A stretch of 64,000 bases of DNA. Origin: Eutreptiella sp. 'Long Island Sound 2002' (taxonomy: Eukaryota; Protista; Euglenida). Positions 43,701-59,375 of the stretch are shown piece after piece. The notes under the pieces are model-generated. The model ran no database searches. It saw only the letters and a program-made list of their open reading frames with translations, and was not told where the DNA came from. The translations under genes were made by a program, and so were the position numbers. The stretch is from NCBI GenBank assembly GCA_964036045.1, contig OZ038378.1, forward strand, positions 125,798,001 through 125,862,000, read 5' to 3'. Each line of letters opens with the position of its first letter. Position 1 is the stretch's first letter.

Positions 43701-44069
43701 TCTATATTGATCCCAACATAACACTTTGTTGTGTACTGTGCCACAACGATGTGAGATTGGCGTCATTTTCCTTGTTTTGCTAATTTTGGGCTTTGCATGT
43801 TCCAAAATATGCGACATGCCATTTATGATGCCCATCGGGGAGAGTTTTGTTTTGGGTAGTGCCGCTCATTTCTTGTAATTTTTGTCTACGTTGTAACAAC
43901 CGAGGGGCTCCTTGGCGGCAATAGGCGTGCAAAATGTGATCACCTCTCGTACACAATGCACATGGGTCAGCAGACAACAAGAAAAATTCAAACCCGAGTT
44001 TTCCATGCCATTGCCTATCTGCAACAGTGCTACTTTCGTGACGTTGGGTCTTTAAAAAACAGTTTGCAT

Positions 44070-46924
44070 GGGTTGGGGAAAATTGGCTTGCGCAACGGGG
44101 GGGGGGGGGGTCGTTGGAGCCCCTTTTCCGGACCCCCCCCCCTCCTTGGCTCCCGTGATGGGGACTTTAAAAAGGTCATAGATGGTGGCAAATAAAGTTG
44201 AACTTCCATTGAGGGGGGGGGGGGGGCAGCAGTGGTGGTATTTATGCCCGGTCACTTCGGGCTACATCCCATAGCACAAAAAAAAATTGAGGAGATGTAG
44301 CGTCCCACCTGGCCTCCTACTGCCACAGACGACTGAGAGGCAGAAGTCAAAGACGACACATCAGAGGAATCGGAATCAGAACTTGAGGTGTCATTGGTTG
44401 AGTCAGAGCTAGTGTTGGAGTCCGGTTCAGATGCAGACCTAGACGCGGAGCATGTGGAAGGGGCTGAAGTGGTAGGATGTGATGAAGGAGCACAGTTTAG
44501 AGCAGCCAATTCCGAAGCAACGTCGCGTCTTTTTGAGGAACGCTCTGAACAAAACCAGGAAGAATCAGGGATGCAGGCAACAGGGGGGACACAACATTGC
44601 TGATGATAGCCCACAGTGGTACTATGGTCACCATCACAGAGCAAGATATCATTCCCCTCGGATGTCTCTCCGCTCAAACAGATTGCGCAGACAATATCCG
44701 AGCCATCAGAGTCCAGTTGATTTTCCAGGACATCTTGCACATGGGCCATTTCAACACTCTCCACAGGCAAGCCTTTAGCCTCCGCAATAATTTGAATGTA
44801 GTTGTACACCCGCTGCACCAACTCAGGTTTTGGGCCATTGCTACACAACCCCTGGTTCATGAGTACTCGCTTCAAATTACTAACAGTGCACTGTCCATTG
44901 ATCCCCAATGAACCACGCAACTCTCGCAAGAGGCGTTCCACATCAGCCAAAACACCAAGAGTCACCTGTCCGCAACGCCCCGCTTTCACCGAGCCTCACT
45001 CTTCAAAAACTCAAGGCTGCGGCGATGTGCAAACCACTTCGCAATCTGTGCCACTTTGGAGACATTTCCCAAAGCAGTTTGGGCCAAATCTTCCATCTGT
45101 TTCTCCGTAGGATGTTGTGTAACACGGTACAGATTTTTACAGTGCACAGAGGGAGGGTCAACCTTCAACACAGGGACACCCTTTTTTTGCCTTTCCTCCT
45201 CCACAGAATCAGGTGACATGAAATTACCATCTTCAGCATAGATGGGGTCATTCAGAAAACCAGAGACTGCATCGTTGGAGATCGACAAATCAGAGCATAT
45301 TTGGAATGAGGGCGGGCTACTGTAATCTGCCGCTGTGCACAAACGGTTCAAATGACGCACACATGCCATGCGACGCAACTGAAAATCGAAAAACCCGGCT
45401 GCATGGTGCAGCTCATGGTACCGTAGGGCATTCGCAATGGAGAAGCGTGCGCTGAGGGGAAGCTCCTCAGGCGTACCATCCAGCACAATGCGACAGTACA
45501 TCCTGAAATCTTGCGAGAAGGTGTCCGACCCCTCAACACCAGGGTGCGACATGAGACTGATGATGGGTTTTTTACTGTACGTCGCACCGGCAATGGCATT
45601 GGCCAGCACAGATTGAAACCGGGGCTGACGGACCGCAAGCACTTCAGCACGCGGAAGGGAGGCATCACTGTCAAGCAACACAGCCTGTTTTAATTTTCCC
45701 TTTTGCACAGAACGGGTCTCAGCACCATTTACCCTTTCAGCCTCATTGAGGGAGGAGAGTCCTGCTGCCCTGCAACATGCCATGGTGAAAGGTCTTTGGT
45801 TGTGCAAGTGCTCAAATGTCACTGCCAACCGCACCTCTGTATTTCTGGGATTATGATCCCAACCACCATCAGACACAAATGTGATTTCCCCTCCAGTTGC
45901 AAACTGTGAAGCCACTGCATGTTGACATACAAGCAGGAAATCATTGACAGATTGAAATGGGGTGGAACGACGTTCAGCCACTACCTTGGTGACTGCAAAG
46001 GCCTACTTGCGTACAGGGAGGTCATACTTTTTTTGTGCATGATTCTCATCAGCTGCAACAAGCCAGTAGAACAGGAGACTATTGGTGACACATTTGAAAA
46101 GGCCAGTCAACCGATTGGCATCATTGTAGGGTGCAGTTTTGTGCAACTATGATGTGGGGCCGGGGTGCTGAAGTTGGGGTATGGGGTACGGATGAGGAGT
46201 GTGTGGAGGAACTTTGGGATGCGGGCGTGAAAAAAATCTGTGATGGTAGCCCGCTTTGACCTGGCTGGTGTCTTGGGGCTTTCCTGGCTTCAAACACAAG
46301 TCCATGTTCTGAGTTCCAAAACTCTTTATAAGCGTTGTGAGGAACTGGAAAACACTTGCATGGAAGGGGTATGATGCTTGACATTTTCACTGGTAAAATG
46401 CAGAAAACCCAGATCTGGTGCGTGAAAAAAGATACTTTTTTTCCCCTTGGGTGAGGGTGGGTGGGAGTAAGGAAAGGAGAGGTCGTGTCAACCTTTTTAG
46501 CCACCAGGGGAATAGGGTGGGGTCTGAGTGTGTATTTCGCTTAGCCCACTTTATCAGGGGGTCGGGCATTGCGAGTCCTGAGGAGGAGCCCCGGGCGCCC
46601 CCAGTCCTCGGTTTTTTCTTTTTCCCCCTCCCCTTCGGATCTGCCACAAGGGTGTCACACCTGTGAAACATCAAAACCCTAGCATCATGGTTGAGCGCAC
46701 TAGGGAACTGCCCCCTAGGCCCTGCCCGTGCCCCTTTTATACCCCGTAGGGACCGGCGGGAGTTAGTTCCGGAATTCAGTGAAAAAATGGCAAAAATGGA
46801 AAAAAAATTGGGACTTTACCATGGTTTCTGTCACAGGAGCCCCATTGCCAGACCACCCCCCCCTCGTTCGGGGGGCTCCCGTGACCCCCCCCCCCCCCCG
46901 CGCAAGCCAATTTTCCCCTTGCCC
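44070..46924 (-). mobile_element. TIR DNA transposon with Zator-like transposase
   Basis: Inverted ends GGGTTGGGGAAAATTGGCTTGCGC...GGGG and GCGCAAGCCAATTTTCCCCTTGCCC; flanked by AT (or ATG) on both sides; removing the element restores an open frame (LKNSLH-VALRRWLKLEGHYEW). Confidence 0.75.
44252..46140 (-). pseudogene. Zator-like DDE core + homeodomain-like + SAP + PHD finger + Ser-rich tail (one TAG, one frameshift)
   Basis: FVSDGGWDHNPRN...AAGLSSLNEAERVN (compare the Zator-type DGGPDENP...PGxSAxNxVERR motif, recalled); HPTEKQMEDLAQTALGNVSKVAQIAKWFAHRR; SNLKRVLMNQGLCSNGPKPELVQRV; CAICLSGETSEGNDILLCDGDHSTTVGYHQQCCVPPVACIPDSSWFCSER. TAG at 46003; frame change near 44990. Confidence 0.7.
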
Positions 46925-48030
46925 ATGTAGCGTTGCGGAGGTGGCTCAAACTTGAAGGCCACTACGAGTGGGCACTCCAGCGCACAAAAGTGAAAGAGAC
47001 ACATGGGTTACTGTGAATGTGCATGACCCCTACAACCATTTATGTGACACATGACAGTGTTTCAAGGGTGCGTTTTCCGGCGAACAAAAGTCAAAGATTT
47101 AAAAATGTTTTTTTCTGCACGTGTTTTGGAGTGGCACCTAGTTGCGAACTTTGCCATTTTTGCCACATGCTTACAAGAAAGCCTAATTCAATTTCACTAT
47201 GTTCCGTTTGGGTGGAAGTTTTCGTCAGGGGTAGCACAAAATACATTGGTTGTGATGCTACACAACACGCGAGAGACCTAAATTACTACAACTTGCGCTG
47301 CTTGGGCGATGTACTCATCTCATGCGAAGATGGGACGACATTTGAGCACATGTCGTCCATGCTTGGTACTATAATGACGAACAAAAGGCTGAGAACATCC
47401 AAATAGTTGTGCCTAGGTCCGCACCATGAAGTCTTTTGGTTGGGAAATAGTTTGAACCCTATTAAGGGTGAGATCGAGCACACGGACAAGAGGCTGTACA
47501 ATGGTCCCGTCTGCTAGAGAAGACAAGGGGCTCAACGATCTGGCCCAAAGTGGTGGAGACGGTGAGTGGCAAGATGCAATGGGCATTTGGCCCAGAAAAT
47601 GGGGTTCTTGATGGGATGGCACCGCTTCAGATGGGGCCAACGGAGATTTCAACACCACTTGGCCACAACACGAGCATGTGCGCTATTTGATGCCATCAGC
47701 ACTTCATGTGTGTGGGCCATGGCGGACAAATTCCCCGACAAATTTGCCTTTTCATCATATCCTGCAGCTTATGCGACTAAATTCAGTATTGGGTAAAGGC
47801 CGCACATTAGCGCAAGGAATCAGGTGTTGAGCACAGTTATGCAACTAAGATACCACAAACAAGTAAAACTTTTGGAGGTCTTGCATGCTTGCAAACTTAT
47901 AATGAACCCCGAATGACAACAAACTATGACTTGTTGAGAAGTCCACGTGTCGCAAAACACCACGACTCGAACTTTGTTTTTGTTTTTTCAGATCAGAACT
48001 GCTAAGCACTTCTTTGACGACGGAAAGCAT

Positions 48031-50630: not shown

Positions 50631-50676
<46 letters not shown>
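49342..50676. mobile_element. (TA)n-capped element with asymmetric inverted repeats
   Basis: (TA)n 49342-49430; CTACACCCCTCTCCC at 49431; its inverse at 50610-50624; 8-nt spacer; (AT)n 50633-50676; internal 162-bp repeat x3 (GCTCAAACAAGTG at 50157, 50319, 50481); whole cassette flanked by CATGT (49337-49341, 50677-50681). Confidence 0.75.
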
Positions 50677-50678
<2 letters not shown>

Positions 50679-51794
50679 TGTGATGAGGTTTGTATGCGGA
50701 ATGCTGCACCGAACTTCTATTTTGTACGTATTGTTCTACCATTGGTGCCAATGTCAAAGTGTGTCCTCAAGTGTTTCCCTCGTTTGCCTTGCATTGTACA
50801 ATTGTACTCCACAAAGTCCTCCTCACTTCCATCCCACTTCTCCCCAACATGCTTGTGCGTTGTGCTGGGCATATTTGTCTCACAGTTGCTACAACCATTT
50901 TTTGTCTTGGACACATCAAGCGCCGTGCGCAGTTCAGTTTGCGGTTTGTCCTATCTACCGGGCGCTACATGTGCCCCTCTAAGCGGTGTCCCTCCGGTGA
51001 GTATTAGCGGCAAGGTCTGCTGCAAGAAATGAAAAAAAACAAAAAAAATCCAAAGGCCAATCCGAAACAGTAGCTGCCATGCGGAAAACGGTCTACTAAT
51101 TCCAGACACCACCGGCATGTGTGTGGACACCAAGAGATAATATTCAGGTAAAGCCTAGAAAGAGTCTAGTAACACCGTGTACTTATGCACCACGGCAAGG
51201 CGGTCTGTGGTTTCTAGGCACTGTTTACCAGAAATGGGGGCGGTGTGCAAATTGCACAAACATACTCAATGACAGTATGCGGTGCGTGTGAAGTGCCGAA
51301 ATTTGGGAAGGCTCCAATACCCCCAAAGTGCTACCATTGTTTACTTGTGCACCACAAGAAGGGGCTTTGTGGTCTTCATGTGCCTAACAGAAGTGGACAA
51401 TGGGCTCCGAGCTTTTTTTTACCCACTGCGGGGGAGGGGGGTGGGTGCAAAATGGGAAAGCAGGCACCCACCTTTGGCAGGCAGGCACACCACTTGTCAA
51501 ACGCCCACCCCAAGGGGCACCCAAGGGGCAGCCTCCAATCCACCAACCACAAAAACCAACGTGCACCTCTGACGGCTGGAGCTAATCGTTTTGCTGATCA
51601 CTTTGGCGGTTTCCGCAAAATGGCACCAAATTGTCGCAACACACTTTCCAGTGTTCCGGTGTGGCATTGGCATGGTCGGAAATGTGCATGCCACATTGAC
51701 GCAAAACTTTCATGTCGAGTTGTCACAGCGAGCCAAACGGCTGTAGGGCAAAATGGGACTGGAAGTGTAACATTGAGGTATTCTACTCCTTGGA
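50677..51794 (+). repeat. 1118-bp direct repeat, copy 1 (left flank of LINE-B)
   Basis: Same length as 58258-59375; I saw five substitutions and no indel. Confidence 0.95.
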
Positions 51795-51806
51795 CTCCAT
51801 TCGATT

Positions 51807-54800
51807 ATGGTGTACCTGAACCCAGGGGACACGGCGGCCCCATGGGTATGCTTACGTGCCAAGGGCACGGTACCATACTTGGGCCTGCGCCTCGATCCCA
51901 GGGGGATGGCGACCATGAAGGAGAAACATGTACTCCGGTGCGAAGCTCTGCTGGGCTGGTGCAAGAACACGTTAGGGCCGGCGTCGGTGCCTCATGAGGT
52001 GATGGCGGCTGTGGTTGGAGGCATCGTGCGGTACGCGGCGCCCTACCTGTCCGACACGGCGGAGGCGGTGGTCAAGCTGAATACTGCCATCAAGGCTGCG
52101 GCCCTGCAGTTCGAGAAGCTGCCCAAGGACCTGTCCAACGTGGCGGTGCGGTCAGGTCATGGGCTACGGCTGGCGGATGTCCAGGTTATATGCCGCGACT
52201 CCGTCGTGGCGACCATGGCTCAGCTCACCCACCACAGGTCGACGACAGTCCGGGATGAGCTGCGGGCCATGCTCCGAGACATGCACGTGCAGTACGGAGT
52301 GTGCGGGTAGTTCATGGTGCCCTCTGCGTCATTCGCCACACACGCTGGCAATACGTGGGTGGACAGGGTACTCAGGGCGATGGGGACGTTGCGCGTAGGA
52401 CTTCTCATGCCATCGTCGGTGTACTCGTGTGTACACGCCCATCTGCCGCAGGTGCAGTGGGCGGGGCGGAAGTGGGTGTCCCAATCCTATTCCTTCAAGG
52501 GTAGGGACATATGCATTCTCTCGGGGCCCCGCACAGATGCGACAGTACAGTCCCTGACTGATCCCGCAAATGACCTCCTGCATGCGCGGCTCCCCTGCCC
52601 TGCGCCTGAGCACTGGGCTGTCCAGCTTCAGGAGTGCCATGAGGACCACCTGCACCTTCCGCACGCGGGAGTAGGGCCCCACCAGCTGGACCATGTGTGG
52701 CTCACGGGGCTCCGCGACGTCTTCCGGCCGCAGCTGCCCGGTCCGTTGACTCACCGGCTAATACACCCGATGCGCCGAAAGAAGGCCAGCAAACGCAATA
52801 GACAGTCCGCTGCGGGGGACGTGTATGTGGTGGGCGGATACAGGGAGGAAGAATGGGACCCGGCCAACCCGGGGCTGTCCATGCCGTTCGTCCCGCTAGC
52901 CGCCCTCCTGTTTATATTGGGGGACGTCTTTGAGGGCTACCAACAGCAAGACGATCCGGCGTCCGTCCCCCTGCTCACTCCTCACGCCGGGGGCGGCATA
53001 AGCCCGCCACCACTGTGGGTTGTGCACGGGCGGCCAGCGTTTTCCAGGGCGTGCGCGGCGGTGCACAAGTGCAGCGAGTGGGCAATTGTTCTTCTGCTGC
53101 CAGCAGGCCCAATCCCGGATCCGGATGAGTACTCGGTCCCGGAAGTGGTCCGGATGTCCAACGTGCCGCATGATCCGCACGTCGCCGTCACGTCGTTGCG
53201 TGATGGCGGCGCAGTGGAGCAGGGGTCTGTGGTGGTATACCAGCCTTCCTGCTCCGCAACAGTTTGGGGAGCGGAGTATACCACCGCCCTGGACGCCATA
53301 AAGTCAGTCTGCGGATGTGACCTGGCCTGGAGACCACATGCGGTGTATCGACCGAGGGTGGTCCTGTCCCCGGAGCGCACGGCCTCCAGTGCGGCGCCCC
53401 TGGGAAAGGTGGTGCAGAGCCCCCACTCCGACGTGGCGTGGCTGAAGCCCCACCGGTACTGCTGGGTGCTGGTGGCGACTAAAGTCACATCGTCTGACGC
53501 GTCGCCCCAGGGAGACGACGCCACAAACGTGGCGGTGGCCAGCCACGGAATCCCCACGTGGACGGGTGCCATCTACGGCACGGTCCCGGAGGCAGAGATC
53601 ATTGGCGCGGCGGCGTACTTGTTGCACACGCCCCCGTCAGCGTGCACGGTGCACGTGGTGGATGCGTCCGTCATAGGAGCGCATCTCCGCAGGGCGCAGG
53701 AGGCCCTGTACCGTGGCATCAAGGGGCCGACATCACATCTGGTCAATCAGCACGCACTGAGCTGGATAGTGGAGGGGCTGCGGCGCCTGCCGCGCCGAGT
53801 TGGGGGGCCGCACCACTGGGTGGTGAGGCAGAGCTCGCACTTGGCGGCGGTCCCGCTCGAGGCACCGGACTCTGCCGCGGCCCGCGCAATGGCCCCGCCT
53901 GTCCATCTCGTCCTGCCAAAGGAGCACGCCATCCTCTTGGTGCCGGGGGATAATGGTGAGCTCGAGCCGCGTGTGCCATCCATGCAAGCCCTTCAGCAAG
54001 TCCGGGAGATGGAGTGGCGCTCGCTAGCGGCTCGCACCAGGGCGCACACGCCACTGGCTGGCGCCTGCGAGGCGATGCCCCTGGGAGCTGTGCACCACGG
54101 CCCAACGCACAGGAATATGCTGCGGGCACGTGACGGTCGCTTGTCCACCATGCAGGTCATGCGACGGTGGAGACAGAAGCTCACGCGTATGGCAATACCA
54201 GCCCACCCCTGTATCTTCTGTGGGGGGCCGGAGGAGGACATTGGCCACATGCGCCTACTGTGTGCACAGGATGAGGAGGTGGCTGGGCTCCTGTGCAGGC
54301 GTGTGGAGGAGTTCACGGCGGAGCTACCGCTGACAGACAGGGCGGTGGACTTCGTGGCGTGGAGGGAGCACGGCTGCAGGTGGACTGAATCCCTGATGGC
54401 GGGTGTCGTCCCCGGGGACCTGAAGCGGCTGTTCGCTGCGGTGCGAGCGGCGTCGTCTCGGGGCCCTGCCAAGGCCAGGCTCTTTGTGGAGGACATGGTC
54501 CAGATTGGGGAAGATGTGTATGCCAGCAGGAACCATCGGCTCACCCAGATCATGCAGCTGCCGATGCAAGATCGAAGGAGAGCGGTATACGCGTTCCTGC
54601 GCGGTGACACACCCTTCTGCCCGCCGGCAGGGAGGATCCTGCAGCGTCCGCCGTGGAACCCGTTTGCCGGCCTCCCCGGCGACCTGCGGGCAACCTTTCA
54701 GAGGGCACCGCTGCACGCACTGCTGGTGTCGCGGTCGTGCATCGAGCATGAAGAGGCCCTGTCCTTGTTCCCTCACTGGATGGCGGCGGTGGCGCAGGCC

Positions 54801-55997
54801 TTCGACCTGTGGATCGGTTCCTGGGTGGCGCGGGACATCACGACATTCAGGGAGTGGTCCCGCGTGGTGTTGGTGCAGTCGTGGGCCCAGGTGCGTGGTA
54901 CCAAGGTGAGAAGCCCTGACGGCCAGAGTGATCCCTGGCTTCAGGTGTACGCCAACCATCCAGCTGTGGGGAACGTCATGGGCTGGCCTCGCGAGGTGCT
55001 GCCGGTCCTTCAGCAACCTCTGTGCAGTCTCCCAATCCTGGCGGTGGCTGTCGTACTTGTCGTGGGTACGTTGTGGCTGTATGACCGGCAGCTGCGACGA
55101 GTCGTACCAGCGGTCACGGAGCAGCGGTCCATGGCGGTGTTAATGGGCTCCAAGCAGCTGGCACGGGTACAGGGCGACGACGCGCAGGGCCACGTCACGG
55201 AGGCCATGTTCTCTCTGCCAGAGGGGGACGACCACGTGGCTGCCGATGCCCGTCACACCCTTGACACCCTAGGCCTCGAGGCGGTCATTGAGGCTCGGGC
55301 GGGAGGACAACGCTTGGTTCTGGCATCCGCCAGGGGCCCGGAGCAGGACGGGGTTGATGTCATCGGGGAGGTCTTACAGGACTACGGTTGGGAGCTCCTG
55401 GCGCATGGCACACACAGTCCCAAAGTGGCGCGGTGGCCCCGGCTGCTTGAGAGCCTGCCGGTGATGCCCGACGGGCGACCGATACTCCGCCCGGTGTCCA
55501 CGTGGGAGGAAGCGAGGCGCAGCCTCCTCAGTAGTGCCACAGCACGCACGCTGGCGGGTGCCTTGCTCGGACTCCAGGACGCGTGCTGCGATGTATGGCA
55601 GGACCTGTGGTCGCAGTGCTGTGATGGTAGCTGCGTTCCGTCGCGGTCTGTGCTTCTGCAGCGATGCCACGGGTGCGGGGAAACGGTGTCAGTTTGGGTT
55701 CATCAGTGTGCCTCCATCCCGCTGTGCGGGACCTGCAAGGAGCGTGCCGATAGGGGATGGCCTAAGGCGAGGTGGGCACTGCGGCACTCTGGGCAGATGT
55801 CCTCTAGCGCCTGGAAGACTATCCAGGGTGGCCTGAAGAGCGTCCGAGTGGAAGGGGTACGGTGCCCTGGAGCGCCGTCTGCGGCCCTGCCCCTGATGCT
55901 GTGGTGCGCGGCTCTGGAGGGCGACTCACGGATACTCTGGTTGTGGCATCGCGGAGGAATTGGTGACGGCGTGGTGGGGGCCGGGGGTGCAGGTTGA
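51807..55997 (+). pseudogene. RT thumb - RNase H-like - CCHC zinc finger - long C-terminal extension (single in-frame TAG at 52308)
   Basis: VPYLGLRLD (RT thumb YLG); EAEIIGA, VHVVDAS, WVVRQSSH (RNase H-like); CIFCGGPEEDIGHMRLLC (CCHC). ORFs 51807-52310 and 52314-55997 are in frame. Confidence 0.8.
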
Positions 55998-56609
55998 TGG
56001 GGTTGGGAATTGTGGGTGCACCAGCTACCGTCCCTACGCTGGACGCAGCGGAGGGGGTAGCGCCTGAGAAGCAGTGCCTTCACGGCCTGATTGTGCGGTA
56101 CTGGCAGGCGGCGTATGACGGCAAACGCGATGTGACAGGTCGTGCCGGCTTGATGGTGAGCCGTACTGCCCCCGTGCATGAGGGTCGCACAGGGATGCTT
56201 CACCCGCCTGCCCCGGGTCGCCGCATACAACAGTGAGGTGTCATGGGTCGTCCCGACCAGGGTAATAAGGCCCAAACCCCTGTAGGGTATTCCCATGACA
56301 CCGGGGTCTCTACTGGCGGCCCAGCTACGGCAGTATTGGGAGTGGTTGCTCGGGATACACCGGGGGTGCACGGAGTTGTCTGGGGGTTACGGCGTCGCGG
56401 CGCCCCCTGGGAGTGTTACAAGGGGTTACGGGGACGGCCTGCAGGCCCCGGGAGCGGCGACGAGGCGAAGATGTGTGCGTAAAAGGGTATGGCAGTGGGG
56501 TCGTCAGGGGGACAGTATGGCGGGCGTCGTGGAGACGGCGTGGCAGCCTGGGAGGAGCGCTCACGGGGGGCACGTGGAGTTCCAGGTGACGGAGTACTAG
56601 GGTCTTGGG

Positions 56610-56825
56610 GGTAAACACGGCGGTACTGGGATCCGTACGGTGGGAGTACGCGGCGGTACTGGGGAACCGTACAGTGGGGGAGCCGCGGGGAAGTTCCAGA
56701 TGACGGTGTACTGGCATCGTGGGGGTATACGCGGCGGTACTGGGGACCGTATGCTGGGGGTACGCGGCGGTACTGGAGGGCCGTACAGTGAAGGCGCTAC
56801 GGGGTTGCATGGCGGTACTGGGGTG
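56610..56825 (+). repeat. Short tandem repeat (about 31-34 bp, core GGCGGTACTGGGG) in the LINE-B 3' region
   Basis: About six copies of the core visible. Confidence 0.75.
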
Positions 56826-58223
56826 TCCCCTTGACCCCTCTAACAACTCAGGGGGAGCGCGGGGGCATCCCCTGGCCCCGTTAACAAACTAGAGGGACCG
56901 TGCCTGCGGGCATGTACATAGTCTAACCTCTGACCATGGCCTTGTGGTTGCGGTGGTGCGTGTCGTGGCGGCTCGCAGGTGGCGTCGGCGTGGCAACAGC
57001 GGTACTGCGTGGCGTCGTAGCGAAGAGTATGCGGTCGCCACACCACTGAAACGGCTTACCCCTGGGGGGCGCCAGTCCGGTCGGCTAGAGGCGAGGGGGG
57101 AAGAGGAGCGGCATGCTGAGTGGTCCGGGGGGTGGCGCGCGGGCCAATGCTATAAGTAGGCTCGCCACGTCGTCGGTGGGGGCCGAACCTGCGGCCTGGC
57201 CGCTGCTGTGGCGGAAGAGGCGCAACCACGGGAGCTGGCCAATCAGTGCAGGTAAGGGTCAAGGGTAGGCGCCAGGGCAAAGTATGTGGGCCAGATGAGG
57301 TGCACCTGGTTACCACAGCCCGGAGCGAGCCTCTGGTGGGTACCCCTACAGGGGGTCGATAACCAAGCTACGGCACCCACCAGCCCGAATCCCAGCCAGC
57401 GATATTCACGGGTTGCGCCACTCCCGTCACGTAGCGGCCGGCGTCCCCCCCTGAAGACCCTCAAGTTATATTATACGTGGGCAAGTGGATGCCTCGAAGC
57501 CGATTGGGTGCTGGCCCCTGACATGGAGTGCCGGCATGGTATATATCAGGGGTGTGGGAGCAGCTCAGGGTCACGGGGACGTGGAATTGGTATCATGTCT
57601 CTGTACTATACTAAGGGGATGGTGCGGTGGGTCGGTGGCGTACATTGTGGAGACATGGGGGCGATGAAAGCTGAGGGCCAAGCTAGGCTGGAGCCTCCCA
57701 GAAATCCTGGCAATGCACAAACGGGCTATTGCGTGCTGGCAGTGGGGTACGTGGAGTCAGGGGTGGTGGGCAATTTCGAGAACGCAGACGGCAATGGATT
57801 CCAGGGGGTCATGGGTGATGGATGTCTCCACGGTGGCGGGGGTACGCGAACGACGGAGGGTCAGCTCTCGCTTTACCGCATGCGTGCTGCTTTGTTCCTT
57901 GGTTGCCGCTTTGCGACGGACAGAGAAGCCCTTGCTTTCTACTTGTTGCGATGCTGCTGTGTTGCTTTGCCTTGCCCCCATACCCCCGGCGAACAAACGG
58001 GCCAGCGCCCGTCGCCGTTGCTAATGCTAACGCCATGCAGTTGCCACTGCCCCCAAAGCCTGGTTGACCGGTATCCCCGGTCCTCTGGGTCCTCCGTCAT
58101 GCTGTGGGCCACCTCAGGCAGCCCTGGGACCCACGGGATCGAGCGAGGCAGGAACCACCTGTCGGCGCGAGATGCCCGGTAACTCCAGTAGACGGCATGA
58201 TAAGTGGTTATGACTATGACTAT

Positions 58224-58257
<34 letters not shown>

Positions 58258-58259
<2 letters not shown>

Positions 58260-59375
58260 TGTGATGAGGTTTGTATGCAGAATGATGCACCGAACTTCTA
58301 TTTTGTACGTATTGTTCTACCATTGGTGCCAATGTCAAAGTGTGTCCTCAAGTGTTTCCCTCGTTTGCCTTGCATTGTACAATTGTACTCCACAAAGTCC
58401 TCCTCACTTCCATCCCACTTCTCCCCAACATGCTTGTGCGTTGTGCTGGGCATATTTGTCTCACAGTTGCTACAACCATTTTTTGTCTTGGACACATCAA
58501 GCGCCGTGCGCAGTTCAGTTTGCGGTTTGTCCTATCTACCGGGCGCTACATGTGCCCCTCTAAACGGTGTCCCTCCGGTGAGTATTAGCGGCAAGGTCTG
58601 CTGCAAGAAATGAAAAAAAACAAAAATAATCCAAAGGCCAATCCGAAACAGTAGCTGCCATGCGGAAAACGGTCTACTAATTCCAGACACCACCGGCATG
58701 TGTGTGGACACCAAGAGATAATATTCAGGTAAAGCCTAGAAAGAGTCTAGTAACACCGTGTACTTATGCACCACGGCAAGGCGGTCTGTGGTTTCTAGGC
58801 ACTGTTTACCAGAAATGGGGGCGGTGTGCAAATTGCACAAACATACTCAATGACAGTATGCGGTGCGTGTGAAGTGCCGAAATTTGGGAAGGCTCCAATA
58901 CCCCCAAAGTGCTACCATTGTTTACTTGTGCACCACAAGAAGGGGCTTTGTGGTCTTCATGTGCCTAACAGAAGTGGACAATGGGCTCCGAGCTTTTTTT
59001 TACCCACTGCGGGGGAGGGGGGTGGGTGCAAAATGGGAAAGCAGGCACCCACCTTTGGCAGGCAGGCACACCACTTGTCAAATGCCCACCCCAAGGGGCA
59101 CCCAAGGGGCAGCCTCCAATCCACCAACCACAAAAACCAACGTGCACCTCTGACGGCTGGAGCTAATCGTTTTGCTGATCACTTTGGCGGTTTCCGCAAA
59201 ATGGCACCAAATTGTCGCAACACACTTTCCAGTGTTCCGGTGTGGCATTGGCATGGTCGGAAATGTGCATGCCACATTGACGCAAAACTTTCATGTCGAG
59301 TTGTCACAGCGAGCCAAACGGCTGTAGGGCAAAATGGGACTGGAAGTGTAACATTGAGGTATTCTACTCCTTGGA
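58258..59375 (+). repeat. 1118-bp direct repeat, copy 2 (right flank of LINE-B)
   Basis: Matches 50677-51794; both copies are preceded by (TA)n and end at TTCTACTCCTTGGA. Confidence 0.95.

What the first reader, a model, noticed from the sequence alone, without database searches (positions are those of the whole stretch)
44252..46140. Zator-like transposase fused to homeodomain-like, SAP and PHD modules
One TIR-bounded element encodes, in order, a DDE core, a helix-turn-helix ending in WFAHRR, a SAP motif and a PHD finger of the NDIILCDG type seen in plant PHD-homeodomain proteins. Only one TAG and one frameshift separate the parts; the last PHD ligand is Arg (CGT, one change from TGT). A cut-and-paste transposase with its own histone reader and two DNA-binding modules suggests chromatin-guided target choice or silencing evasion. 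I do not know this architecture from described Zators.
Basis: partly seen in the sequence, partly recalled or inferred. Interest (0 to 1): 0.75.

Follow-up and report, generated by a model that had tools for sequence, protein, structure and literature searches.

The report
Dead Zator-like transposon with chromatin-reader tail
This is a broken copy of a jumping gene whose cutting enzyme carries, in one protein, two DNA-gripping modules and a histone-reading PHD finger; intact relatives show the design is old and widespread in protists and appears undescribed, which suggests these elements choose landing sites by reading chromatin.

Summary
Window 44070-46923 (minus strand) is a 2.85-kb DNA transposon copy. 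It has ~54-bp terminal inverted repeats and a 3-bp target-site duplication (CAT at 44067-9 and 46924-6).

The copy is dead:
- The first ~160 codons (HTH and first catalytic Asp) are missing.
- There are two stops: TAG 46003-5 and TGA 44986-8.
- A GG insertion shifts the frame.
- The last PHD zinc ligand is Arg.

Intact siblings settle the architecture. P0022 (759 aa, one intronless ORF in a 3.4-kb element) reads HTH, DDE core, homeodomain-like, SAP, PHD and an acidic Ser-rich tail in a single frame. Seven copies carry the TIRs; five have perfect 3-bp TSDs.

The core has no Pfam or NCBIfam hit. It folds confidently (pLDDT 86) as an RNase H-like DDE transposase. The best solved match is Mos1 mariner (Z 9.5). 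The nearest named predicted folds are ISAzo13 (PF07592), the bacterial kin of Zator. With the 3-bp TSD, "Zator-like" is probable (~0.6) but unproven.

Distant relatives (~30% identity, marine metagenomes) keep the tail, often with an added chromodomain, so this was not a one-off capture. Chromatin-guided integration is inferred, not shown.

First readers noted two further copies elsewhere in this genome.

The parts
44067..44069 (.). Target-site duplication, 3' side (CAT on the + strand; ATG in gene sense)
   Evidence: The same triplet lies at 46924-46926. The same 3-bp pattern appears in 7 copies, perfect in 5.
44070..44123 (-). 3' terminal inverted repeat. Read from the end inward: GGGTTGGGGAAAATTGGCTTGCGC, then a G-run, then TCGTTGGAGCCCC.
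   Evidence: Homology with sibling L003 stops exactly here.
44252..44989 (-). ORF-C (245 aa): SAP motif (44795-44887), PHD finger (44540-44689) and a Ser/Asp-rich tail. The last zinc ligand is Arg (CGT 44542-44540).
   Evidence: Pfam PHD E 2.7e-4 and SAP E 0.004. Aligned to intact P0008 and P0022.
44978..44988 (-). Break between the homeodomain-like part and SAP: stop TGA 44986-44988 (TTA Leu in sibling L003), plus a 2-nt GG insertion in the G-run 44978-44981
   Evidence: DNA alignment to L003.
44989..45159 (-). Homeodomain-like three-helix module ending in KWFAHRR. Intact relatives have WFGNRR or WFANRR.
   Evidence: Pfam Homeodomain E 0.014-0.022, below threshold. The best PDB sequence hits are all TALE homeodomains (Exd, PBX1), E 0.04-0.1. 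The AF2 model shows three helices at pLDDT 71-85.
45160..46002 (-). Transposase core, C-terminal two thirds: second catalytic Asp (45870-45868), catalytic Glu (45738-45736) and a conserved alpha/beta C-terminal domain
   Evidence: 70% identical to P0022 residues 161-547 without gaps. Triad defined in the 23-sequence alignment. Fold.
46003..46005 (-). In-frame stop TAG (CAG Gln in the intact L001 copy)
46006..46140 (-). Remnant of the core upstream of the TAG (beta2-beta3 region, P0022 residues 161-205). The deletion breakpoint lies at about 46140-46146.
   Evidence: tblastn of P0022 and P0010 starts at their residues 161 and 173. Nothing matches residues 1-160.
46147..46869 (-). Non-coding, rearranged 5' region of this deletion-derivative subfamily
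   Evidence: 93-96% identical in pieces, some inverted, to sibling L003.
46870..46923 (-). 5' terminal inverted repeat (GGCAAGGGGAAAATTGGCTTGCGC, then a G-run, then TCACGGGAGCCCC)
46924..46926 (.). Target-site duplication, 5' side (CAT on the + strand)

Best explanation
**What it is.** Window 44070-46923 is a dead, internally deleted (non-autonomous) copy of a cut-and-paste DNA transposon family.

**The intact element.** It is about 3.4 kb. It has ~50-bp TIRs that begin GG(G/C)..GG(C/G)GAAAATTGGCTTGCGC followed by a G-run, and it makes 3-bp target-site duplications. It encodes one intronless ~760-aa protein with this order:
1. N-terminal helix-turn-helix.
2. RNase H-like DDE catalytic core (Asp136, Asp251, Glu295 in P0022).
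3. A conserved alpha/beta domain.
4. A TALE-homeodomain-like module.
5. A SAP motif.
6. A PHD finger.
7. An acidic Ser-rich tail.

**Classification.** The core is most likely a divergent member or sister of the Zator/ISAzo13 lineage of the IS630-Tc1-mariner group.

**Shown**
- The anatomy of the element.
- Many copies, with TIRs and TSDs.
- The single reading frame in intact copies.
- The DDE fold.
- Conservation of the tail in relatives only ~30% identical, several of which add a chromodomain.

**Inferred mechanism**
- The HTH binds the TIRs, perhaps helped by the homeodomain-like and SAP modules.
- The DDE core cuts the element out and pastes it in with a 3-bp stagger.
- The PHD finger resembles readers of unmodified H3K4. 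In sister lineages a chromodomain sits next to it. Together they would tether the transpososome to a particular chromatin state, probably silent chromatin, and so bias target choice.

**Sub-claim probabilities**
- Transposon relic with this fused architecture: ~0.9.
- Zator superfamily in the broad sense: ~0.6.
- Histone-guided targeting: ~0.35-0.4.
For: **Single frame in intact siblings**
- P0022 (759 aa; L001 6001-8280) and P0008, P0023, P0015 and P0016 read the homeodomain-like, SAP and PHD parts in one frame.

**Mobility**
- Seven copies (window, L001, L003, L128-L131) carry the same TIR.
- The 3-bp TSD is perfect in five copies (ATG, CCA, AGA, CAA, AAG) and has one mismatch in two.
- At least 11 contigs of one assembly carry members that are >=90% identical.
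- Deletion derivatives have different breakpoints.

**Catalytic core**
- D/D/E is conserved across 23 divergent members.
- The AF2 model has pLDDT 86 and pTM 0.76, with the canonical b1-b2-b3-a1-b4-a2-b5-a4 order.
- VIA-align: Mos1 catalytic domain Z 9.5 (165 residues, 3.3 A), Metnase Z 9.0, retroviral integrases Z 8-9, IstA Z 8.7, Sleeping Beauty Z 7.7.

**Zator/ISAzo13 link**
- Atlas search by shape: after three unnamed eukaryotic clusters, one mostly Mucoromycota, come PF07592 clusters at TM 0.49/0.58 over 307 residues and 0.42/0.75 over 236.
- Among fungi, Zator is concentrated in the mucoromycote Rhizophagus (PMC5751038).
- hhalign against verified ISAzo13 proteins aligns 188 co-linear columns. 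All three catalytic residues fall on the ISAzo13 D/D/E.
- Zator and ISAzo13 both make 3-bp TSDs (PMC10045372).

**Tail modules**
- PHD: 26.7 bits against a threshold of 24. Best solved relatives by sequence: KDM5/Lid PHD1 (E 4e-9), CHD4, BHC80, AIRE and BAZ2A/B. The fold matches PHD fingers at TMt 0.7-0.8.
- SAP: weak but repeated hits to SIZ1, MKL1 and THO1 SAP domains.
- Homeodomain-like: repeated Exd/PBX hits.

**Tail is ancestral**
- P0062 aligns through the homeodomain-like, SAP-like and PHD parts, shares the unusual CDGxH...GYH PHD variant, and adds a chromodomain.
- P0207 and the P0049 locus (L124) have PHD plus Chromo. P0162 has PHD.
- These lineages are separated on the core tree.

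**Transcription**
- P0006 comes from a transcriptome (MMETSP).
Against: - No Pfam or NCBIfam transposase model hits any of 23 family members, even at E <= 10.
- The hhalign score against ISAzo13 is weak: 26.1, E 0.02, probability 2%. Column-shuffled controls give 16.1 +/- 2.5 and a reversed template gives 23.1.
- The solved-structure Z-scores (8-9.5) do not separate mariner from retroviral integrases.
- No reference Zator sequence could be compared.
- SAP and homeodomain scores are below Pfam thresholds in every member.
- The AF2 model of the tail is poor (pLDDT 55).
- Nothing tests histone binding or target bias. PHD-like domains can bind DNA instead, as the piggyBac C-terminal domain does (my own knowledge).
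- The seven TSD triplets show no consensus.
- I did not verify the host organism. Other agents' notes call it a euglenid.
Confidence: 0.8

Rival explanations
1. The core is not Zator. It founds a separate, undescribed superfamily of RNase H-like DDE transposons in protists that merely shares the general IS630/Tc1/integrase-like fold and, by coincidence, a 3-bp TSD. The tail architecture is as described.
For: - No sequence model of any transposase family hits it.
- Only 147 representatives among 1.84 billion proteins match the family profile, and none is named.
- hhalign against ISAzo13 gives only 2% probability.
- PIF/Harbinger and CACTA elements also make 3-bp TSDs (my own knowledge).
Against: - The only named transposase family among the nearest Atlas folds is PF07592. 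No DDE_1 or Transposase_1 mariner family and no rve family appears there.
- All three catalytic residues and the preceding HTH align co-linearly with ISAzo13. The D-to-E spacing is 44 residues against 43, and the G-x-S-x-[FW]-N-x-x-E motif is shared.
- Canonical Zator also lacks Pfam hits (PMC5751038), so that absence is uninformative.
Confidence: 0.3
2. The homeodomain-like, SAP and PHD tail does not read chromatin. It serves DNA-end recognition or transpososome assembly, for example a cross-brace zinc module that binds the TIR like the piggyBac C-terminal domain. Alternatively it serves nuclear import or protein stability.
For: - The homeodomain-like and SAP folds are DNA binders.
- The PHD here is a variant in which the fourth ligand is His after a 3-residue insertion (CDGDH...GYH).
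- No histone-binding data exist.
Against: - The closest solved relatives of the PHD, by sequence and by fold, are bona fide histone H3-tail readers at 33-41% identity.
- Several lineages add a chromodomain that scores well above the Pfam threshold: 35-45 bits against 25.1. A chromodomain has no obvious role in TIR binding.
Confidence: 0.25
3. The locus is a pseudogene of a domesticated host gene (a transposase-derived chromatin protein), not a mobile element.
For: - Fusions of a transposase with chromatin domains are typical of domesticated genes (for example SETMAR; my own knowledge).
- One relative is transcribed.
Against: - TIRs and 3-bp TSDs flank seven copies in unrelated flanks.
- There are many near-identical copies and deletion derivatives.
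- The catalytic triad is intact in full-length members.
Confidence: 0.03

Closest known systems
Zator superfamily of eukaryotic DNA transposons (Repbase) and its bacterial relatives, the ISAzo13/TP36 family (Pfam PF07592)
   Same: - Cut-and-paste element with TIRs, a single transposase ORF and 3-bp TSDs (PMC10045372).
- DDE RNase H-like core preceded by an HTH.
- The nearest named predicted folds are PF07592.
- Catalytic residues are co-linear with ISAzo13, with the same D-to-E spacing.
- Like Zator, it has no Pfam hit (PMC5751038).
   Different: - Sequence similarity to ISAzo13 is at the noise edge.
- The protein carries a ~270-aa C-terminal homeodomain-like, SAP and PHD tail, with an added chromodomain in some lineages. 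I found no paper that links such a tail to Zator.
- The hosts appear to be protists and marine plankton rather than animals or fungi.
Tc1/mariner transposases (Mos1, Metnase/SETMAR, Sleeping Beauty)
   Same: Best solved structural matches of the catalytic domain: Z 9.5, 9.0 and 7.7. The layout is also N-terminal HTH followed by a DDE/D core.
   Different: - TSD is 3 bp rather than the 2-bp TA.
- D-to-E spacing is 44 rather than 34.
- There is a large extra domain after the core, and the chromatin-reader tail.
- No Pfam DDE_1, DDE_3 or Transposase_1 hit.
Mobile-element recombinases that carry or recruit histone readers: chromoviral Ty3/gypsy integrases and Maverick/Polinton integrases with chromodomains, and RAG1-RAG2/ProtoRAG, where the RAG2 PHD reads H3K4me3 (my own knowledge)
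   Same: A DDE recombinase is physically coupled to a PHD and/or chromodomain, which in those systems directs or licenses integration or cleavage by chromatin state.
   Different:
- The PHD looks like the unmodified-H3K4 class. It has no Trp two residues before the zinc-binding His, reading GYH (inference from the alignments).
- It is preceded by homeodomain-like and SAP modules.
- Function is untested.
KDM5 PHD1, BAZ2A/B, BHC80, AIRE PHD1 and CHD4/5 PHD2-chromodomain cassettes
   Same: Closest solved relatives of the PHD by sequence (E 4e-9 to 1e-3) and by fold (TMt 0.7-0.8). The PHD-then-chromodomain order of P0062, P0207 and L124 recalls CHD4/5.
   Different: - The fourth zinc ligand is His after a 3-residue insertion in the P0022 and P0062 lineages.
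- The context is a transposase, not a chromatin enzyme.

Membership tests
Zator superfamily (Repbase) / ISAzo13-TP36 | Terminal inverted repeats bounding a single-ORF element | tested here: met
   ~50-bp TIRs in 7 copies. The 19-mer occurs twice in the window against 0.04 expected.
Zator superfamily (Repbase) / ISAzo13-TP36 | 3-bp target-site duplication (PMC10045372) | tested here: met
   Perfect in 5 of 7 copies and one mismatch in 2. The window has CAT on both sides.
Zator superfamily (Repbase) / ISAzo13-TP36 | DDE transposase with an RNase H-like fold | tested here: met
   AF2 pLDDT 86. Mos1 Z 9.5 and integrases Z 8-9. D136, D251 and E295 are conserved. The window copy itself keeps only the second Asp and the Glu.
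Zator superfamily (Repbase) / ISAzo13-TP36 | Detectable sequence or profile similarity of the transposase to TP36/ISAzo13 | tested here: inconclusive
   No PF07592 hit at E <= 10 in 23 members. hhalign gives E 0.02 and probability 2%, yet 188 co-linear columns with all three catalytic residues matched. PF07592 folds are the nearest named ones in the Atlas, TM 0.42-0.58.
Zator superfamily (Repbase) / ISAzo13-TP36 | Clusters with reference Zator transposases in a phylogeny | not testable with these tools
   No Repbase or Zator reference sequences were available. The original description (Bao et al. 2009) is not held in the paper library.
PHD finger (PF00628) | Score above the Pfam threshold and a cross-brace Cys4-His-Cys3 ligand set | tested here: met
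   In the intact sibling P0022: 26.7 bits against 24, PDB E 4e-9, fold TMt 0.8. It is a variant, with ligand 4 as His after an insertion. In the window copy: 21.4 bits, below threshold, and ligand 8 is Arg.
SAP domain (PF02037) | Helix-extended-helix motif scoring above the Pfam threshold | tested here: inconclusive
   19.9 bits against 23.9 in P0022 and 17.1 in the window. The profile hits the SAP domains of SIZ1 (E 0.038), MKL1 (0.32) and THO1 (0.58) at the same place. AF2 gives two helices, but at pLDDT ~50-60.
Homeodomain (PF00046) | Three-helix fold with a WFxNRR recognition helix, scoring above the Pfam threshold | tested here: inconclusive
   15-15.7 bits against 22.9. Eight of nine PDB hits are TALE homeodomains (Exd, PBX1), E 0.04-0.12. 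WFGNRR or WFANRR occurs in intact members and WFAHRR in the window subfamily. AF2 gives three helices at pLDDT 71-85.
Tc1/mariner superfamily | TA dinucleotide TSD and DD34E/D spacing | tested here: not met
   TSD is 3 bp of varied sequence. D251-E295 spacing is 44. There are no Pfam mariner or Tc1 hits.

The most novel reading that the evidence does not exclude
This is an undescribed, widespread protist clade of Zator-like cut-and-paste transposases. They have carried a built-in chromatin-reading cassette since before their main lineages split: a PHD of the unmodified-H3K4 type, often with a chromodomain, behind homeodomain-like and SAP DNA binders. They use it to steer integration into a defined chromatin state. 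As far as I know, it would be the first cut-and-paste DNA transposon with self-encoded histone-mark targeting.
Probability: 0.35. Interest if true: 0.8.

Novelty: new variant of a known kind. Interest (0 to 1): 0.6.

Why it matters
How DNA transposons choose targets in chromatin is largely unknown. The known cases of self-encoded histone readers are LTR chromoviruses, Mavericks and RAG2.

- **A new test system.** This family fuses a compact single-ORF DDE transposase (3.4-kb element) to PHD and chromodomain readers. That makes a natural, testable system for chromatin-guided cut-and-paste integration.
- **A new family.** It adds a protein family with no Pfam model and a confidently predicted fold.
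- **Classification and annotation.** It probably extends Zator/ISAzo13 into protists. It also supplies TIR, TSD and protein signatures for annotating a repeat family in this genome and in marine metagenomes.
- **This copy.** The window copy itself is a dead relic of no functional consequence.

Tried and rejected
**Searches that found nothing useful**
- Pfam and NCBIfam on the window ORFs and on 23 family members: no transposase family, even at E <= 10.
- phmmer of P0022 against PDB sequences: only the PHD hits, nothing for the core.
- Foldseek of the 490-residue model against PDB: only weak global matches, with Mos1 at probability 0.66. VIA-align and the Atlas search were needed.
- ESM Atlas feature search: a lead only for the core (0.78), and no usable hit for the tail.
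- Word searches with the tail (P0022 region 480-700, and P0016): only fragments of the same element family, no host gene with this tail. That search is length-limited, so it is not proof of absence.
- Rfam on the whole window: nothing.
- The original Zator paper is not held in the library.

**Weak results**
- The AF2 model of the tail came out at low confidence (pLDDT 55). Only its PHD and homeodomain-like parts are used, and with caution.

**Readings rejected**
- One-off gene capture: the tail is conserved in ~30%-identical relatives.
- Domesticated single-copy gene: TIRs and TSDs occur in 7 copies.
- Tc1/mariner membership: wrong TSD and wrong D-to-E spacing.

**Method notes**
The pieces were searched apart, and intact siblings were used instead.
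Full report
**1. What is in the window**

On the minus strand, three collinear reading-frame pieces lie between 46146 and 44252.

| Piece | Coordinates | Length | Content |
|---|---|---|---|
| ORF-A | 46146-46003 | 47 aa | Ends in TAG; in frame with ORF-B |
| ORF-B | 45981-44986 | 331 aa | Ends in TGA |
| ORF-C | 44989-44252 | 245 aa | In a shifted frame |

- ORF-B contains SDGGWDHNPRN and NEAERVNG. It ends with KWFAHRR.
- ORF-C contains a SAP-like motif, a PHD finger and a Ser/Asp-rich tail.
- Pfam gives Homeodomain E 0.022, SAP E 0.004 and PHD E 2.7e-4. All are below the gathering scores, and there is no transposase hit.
- A 49-nt inverted repeat (88% identical) lies at 44075-44123 and 46872-46918. 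Its exact 19-mer core occurs only at these two places in the window, against 0.04 expected by chance.

**2. Sibling copies settle the architecture**

A word search with ORF-B found 11 relatives. Cluster look-ups found more.

- P0008 is 91% identical and reads the homeodomain-like, SAP and PHD parts in one frame. Its PHD end is intact (WFCPEC, where the window has WFCSER).
- P0022 (759 aa) is a complete protein encoded by one intronless ORF (L001 6001-8280).
- The order in P0022 is: N-terminal region, core, homeodomain-like, SAP, PHD, acidic Ser-rich tail.
- P0006 is a transcriptome (MMETSP) sequence of a deletion derivative.
- Members at >=90% identity sit on at least 11 different large contigs of one assembly.
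- Two further copies in this same genome were noted by first readers. I did not examine them.

**3. It is a mobile element with TIRs and 3-bp TSDs**

- DNA comparison with the 93%-identical sibling L003 shows homology ending exactly at window 46923 and 44069/44070.
- In seven copies (window, L001, L003, L128-L131) the same termini flank the gene: GG(G/C)..GG(C/G)GAAAATTGGCTTGCGC, then a G-run, then TCACGG.
- The three bases outside the two ends are identical in five copies (ATG, CCA, AGA, CAA, AAG). They differ at one base in the other two.
- In the window the duplication is CAT (+ strand) at 44067-44069 and 46924-46926.
- The intact element is about 3.4 kb (L001 5086-8513). The window copy is 2,854 bp.

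**4. State of the window copy**

- tblastn of intact proteins starts at their residue 161 (window 46140). Nothing matches residues 1-160. The HTH region and the first catalytic Asp are therefore deleted.
- The 5' 780 bp is non-coding and rearranged. It is shared in pieces, some inverted, with L003.
- Further defects:
  - TAG at 46003-46005, where L001 has CAG.
  - TGA at 44986-44988, where L003 has TTA.
  - A GG insertion in the run 44978-44981.
  - Arg (CGT 44542-44540) in place of the last PHD cysteine.

**5. What the core is**

*Sequence.*
- No Pfam or NCBIfam family matches any of 23 divergent members, even at E <= 10.
- An exhaustive profile search found only 147 representatives (E <= 1e-3) among 1.84 billion proteins. 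All are unnamed, and many come from marine metagenomes.
- The alignment shows a conserved triad, numbered as in P0022: Asp136 (WDDHA), Asp251 (SDGGWDHN) and Glu295 (S-S-[FY]-N-E-A-E-R).

*Structure.*
- AlphaFold2 on a 150-sequence alignment gave pLDDT 86 and pTM 0.76.
- The strand and helix order is that of RNase H-like transposases, and the three residues sit on b1, after b4 and on the following helix.
- VIA-align against 48,161 chains ranks the Mos1 mariner catalytic domain first (Z 9.5, 165 residues, 3.3 A). Metnase follows at 9.0, retroviral integrases at 8-9, IstA at 8.7 and Sleeping Beauty at 7.7.
- The ESM Atlas search by shape lists three unnamed eukaryotic clusters first (Cnidaria, Mucoromycota, Rotifera; TM 0.59-0.70). 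ISAzo13 clusters (PF07592) follow at TM 0.49/0.58 over 307 residues and 0.42/0.75 over 236.

*Comparison with ISAzo13.*
- I fetched real ISAzo13 genes with a degenerate DNA pattern and confirmed them with Pfam (E about 1e-115 to 1e-146).
- hhalign of the family against them aligns 188 co-linear columns, from the HTH through all three catalytic residues.
- The D-to-E spacing is nearly the same (44 against 43), and the G-x-S-x-[FW]-N-x-x-E motif is shared.
- The statistics are weak: score 26.1, E 0.02, probability 2%. Column-shuffled templates give 16.1 +/- 2.5 and a reversed template gives 23.1.

*Literature.*
- Zator is related to ISAzo13/TP36, and both make 3-bp TSDs (PMC10045372; PMC7386202).
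- Zator cores have no Pfam similarity. Among fungi they are concentrated in the mucoromycote Rhizophagus (PMC5751038).

*Reading.* This is a DDE cut-and-paste transposase, certainly. It is probably Zator/ISAzo13-like (about 0.6). Membership is not proven, because no reference Zator sequence was available.

**6. The tail**

| Module | Pfam score | Solved-structure evidence | AF2 |
|---|---|---|---|
| PHD | P0022 passes (26.7 against 24) | KDM5/Lid PHD1 E 4e-9, KDM5A/B, CHD4, BRPF/JADE, BAZ2A/B, BHC80, AIRE | PHD part superposes on BAZ2A/B, BHC80 and KDM5 at TMt 0.7-0.8 and 33-41% identity, even in a low-confidence model |
| Homeodomain-like | Below threshold | Eight of nine hits are TALE homeodomains (Exd, PBX1), E 0.04-0.12. 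A family profile adds LASS5/6, Meis and PDF2 homeodomains | Three helices at pLDDT 71-85 |
| SAP | Below threshold | SIZ1 E 0.038, MKL1 and THO1 SAP domains, all at the same position | Two helices at low confidence |

- Most of the PHD relatives listed are known readers of the unmodified H3 tail or H3K4me0 (my own knowledge).
- The finger has GYH rather than W-x-H before the zinc-binding His. It therefore lacks the usual methyl-lysine cage Trp (inference).
- The PHD is a variant: the fourth ligand is His after a 3-residue insertion (CDGDH...GYH).
- Intact members read WFGNRR or WFANRR in the homeodomain-like recognition helix.
- Overall, the homeodomain-like and SAP calls are weak but consistent.

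**7. The tail is a family trait, not a capture**

- P0062 (1,261 aa, TARA scaffold, about 30% identical) aligns through the homeodomain-like, SAP-like and PHD parts. It shares the same CDGxH...GYH variant and adds a chromodomain at 35 bits.
- P0207 (1,294 aa) has PHD plus Chromo at 45 bits.
- The abundant marine P0049 locus has a PHD-plus-Chromo ORF directly downstream.
- The deep-branching P0162 ends in a PHD.
- On a tree of the core, these lineages are separated by long, supported branches. Many rows without a tail are truncated gene calls, so absence there is uninformative.
- Searches with the tail alone found no host protein carrying it. Those searches are limited in reach.
- No paper in the library links Zator with PHD or chromodomains.

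**8. Mechanism**

*Shown:* element anatomy, copy number, TSDs, fold, catalytic residues and the conserved fusion.

*Inferred:*
- The N-terminal HTH, perhaps with the homeodomain-like and SAP modules, binds the TIRs.
- The DDE core excises the element and integrates it with a 3-bp stagger.
- The PHD, with a chromodomain in sister lineages, tethers the complex to nucleosomes in a particular state. This is probably unmethylated-H3K4 or repressed chromatin. It would resemble chromoviral integrases and the RAG2 PHD.

*The main rival for the tail* is DNA-end binding by a PHD-like zinc module, as in piggyBac.

There is no genome baseline to judge this against.

**9. Limits**

- The organism was not verified. 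Other agents' notes call it a euglenid.

**10. Verdict**

The window copy is a dead relic. The family it belongs to looks like an undescribed variant of a known kind: a Zator-like transposon clade with a conserved chromatin-reader tail.

Noticed in passing
L124 2995-3251 (also L125-L127): In the marine P0049-type element, a ~260-bp stretch matches itself in reverse orientation (87%). It lies between two divergently oriented small ORFs upstream of the transposase. The shared block is at least 5.8 kb with different left flanks in four contigs, so this lineage's element is larger and carries extra ORFs of 119, 120 and 168 aa with no Pfam hit.
   Followed up: partly
window 44096-44110, 44131-44145, 44213-44226, 46851-46865, 46883-46900: Long G or C homopolymer runs (10-15 nt) are built into both TIRs and the subterminal regions. 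They are conserved as runs, with variable length, in all seven copies. Their role is unknown; candidates are a binding site, a slippage-prone spacer or a structure-forming tract.
   Followed up: no
L001, L128, L129, L131 flanks; window 50633-59375: Five of the seven insertions examined have a reverse-transcriptase-bearing element within about 4 kb. In L129 an RVT_1 ORF abuts the element's 3' end. This could reflect a repeat-rich genome or a preference for repeat chromatin; no baseline was available.
   Followed up: no
P0022 residues 300-480 (window about 45160-45720): After the catalytic Glu, the family has a ~180-residue domain predicted at pLDDT 94-98. It has conserved Cys and His residues (QLRR..C....L.RLC...DYP......C) and no match in Pfam. 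It may be a zinc-binding or dimerisation domain specific to this family.
   Followed up: no
P0164 about residues 900-940; P0162 about residues 1040-1075: Two distant family members with no Pfam chromodomain hit contain chromo-like motifs (Y.YLVRW....DD..W... and WWVKVRWL). Reader modules may therefore be even more widespread in the family than Pfam shows.
   Followed up: partly
L128 3139-8473: This copy spans 5.3 kb between its TIRs, against 3.4 kb for the intact element. It probably carries a nested insertion upstream of the ORF. One terminal base and one TSD base are mutated.
   Followed up: no
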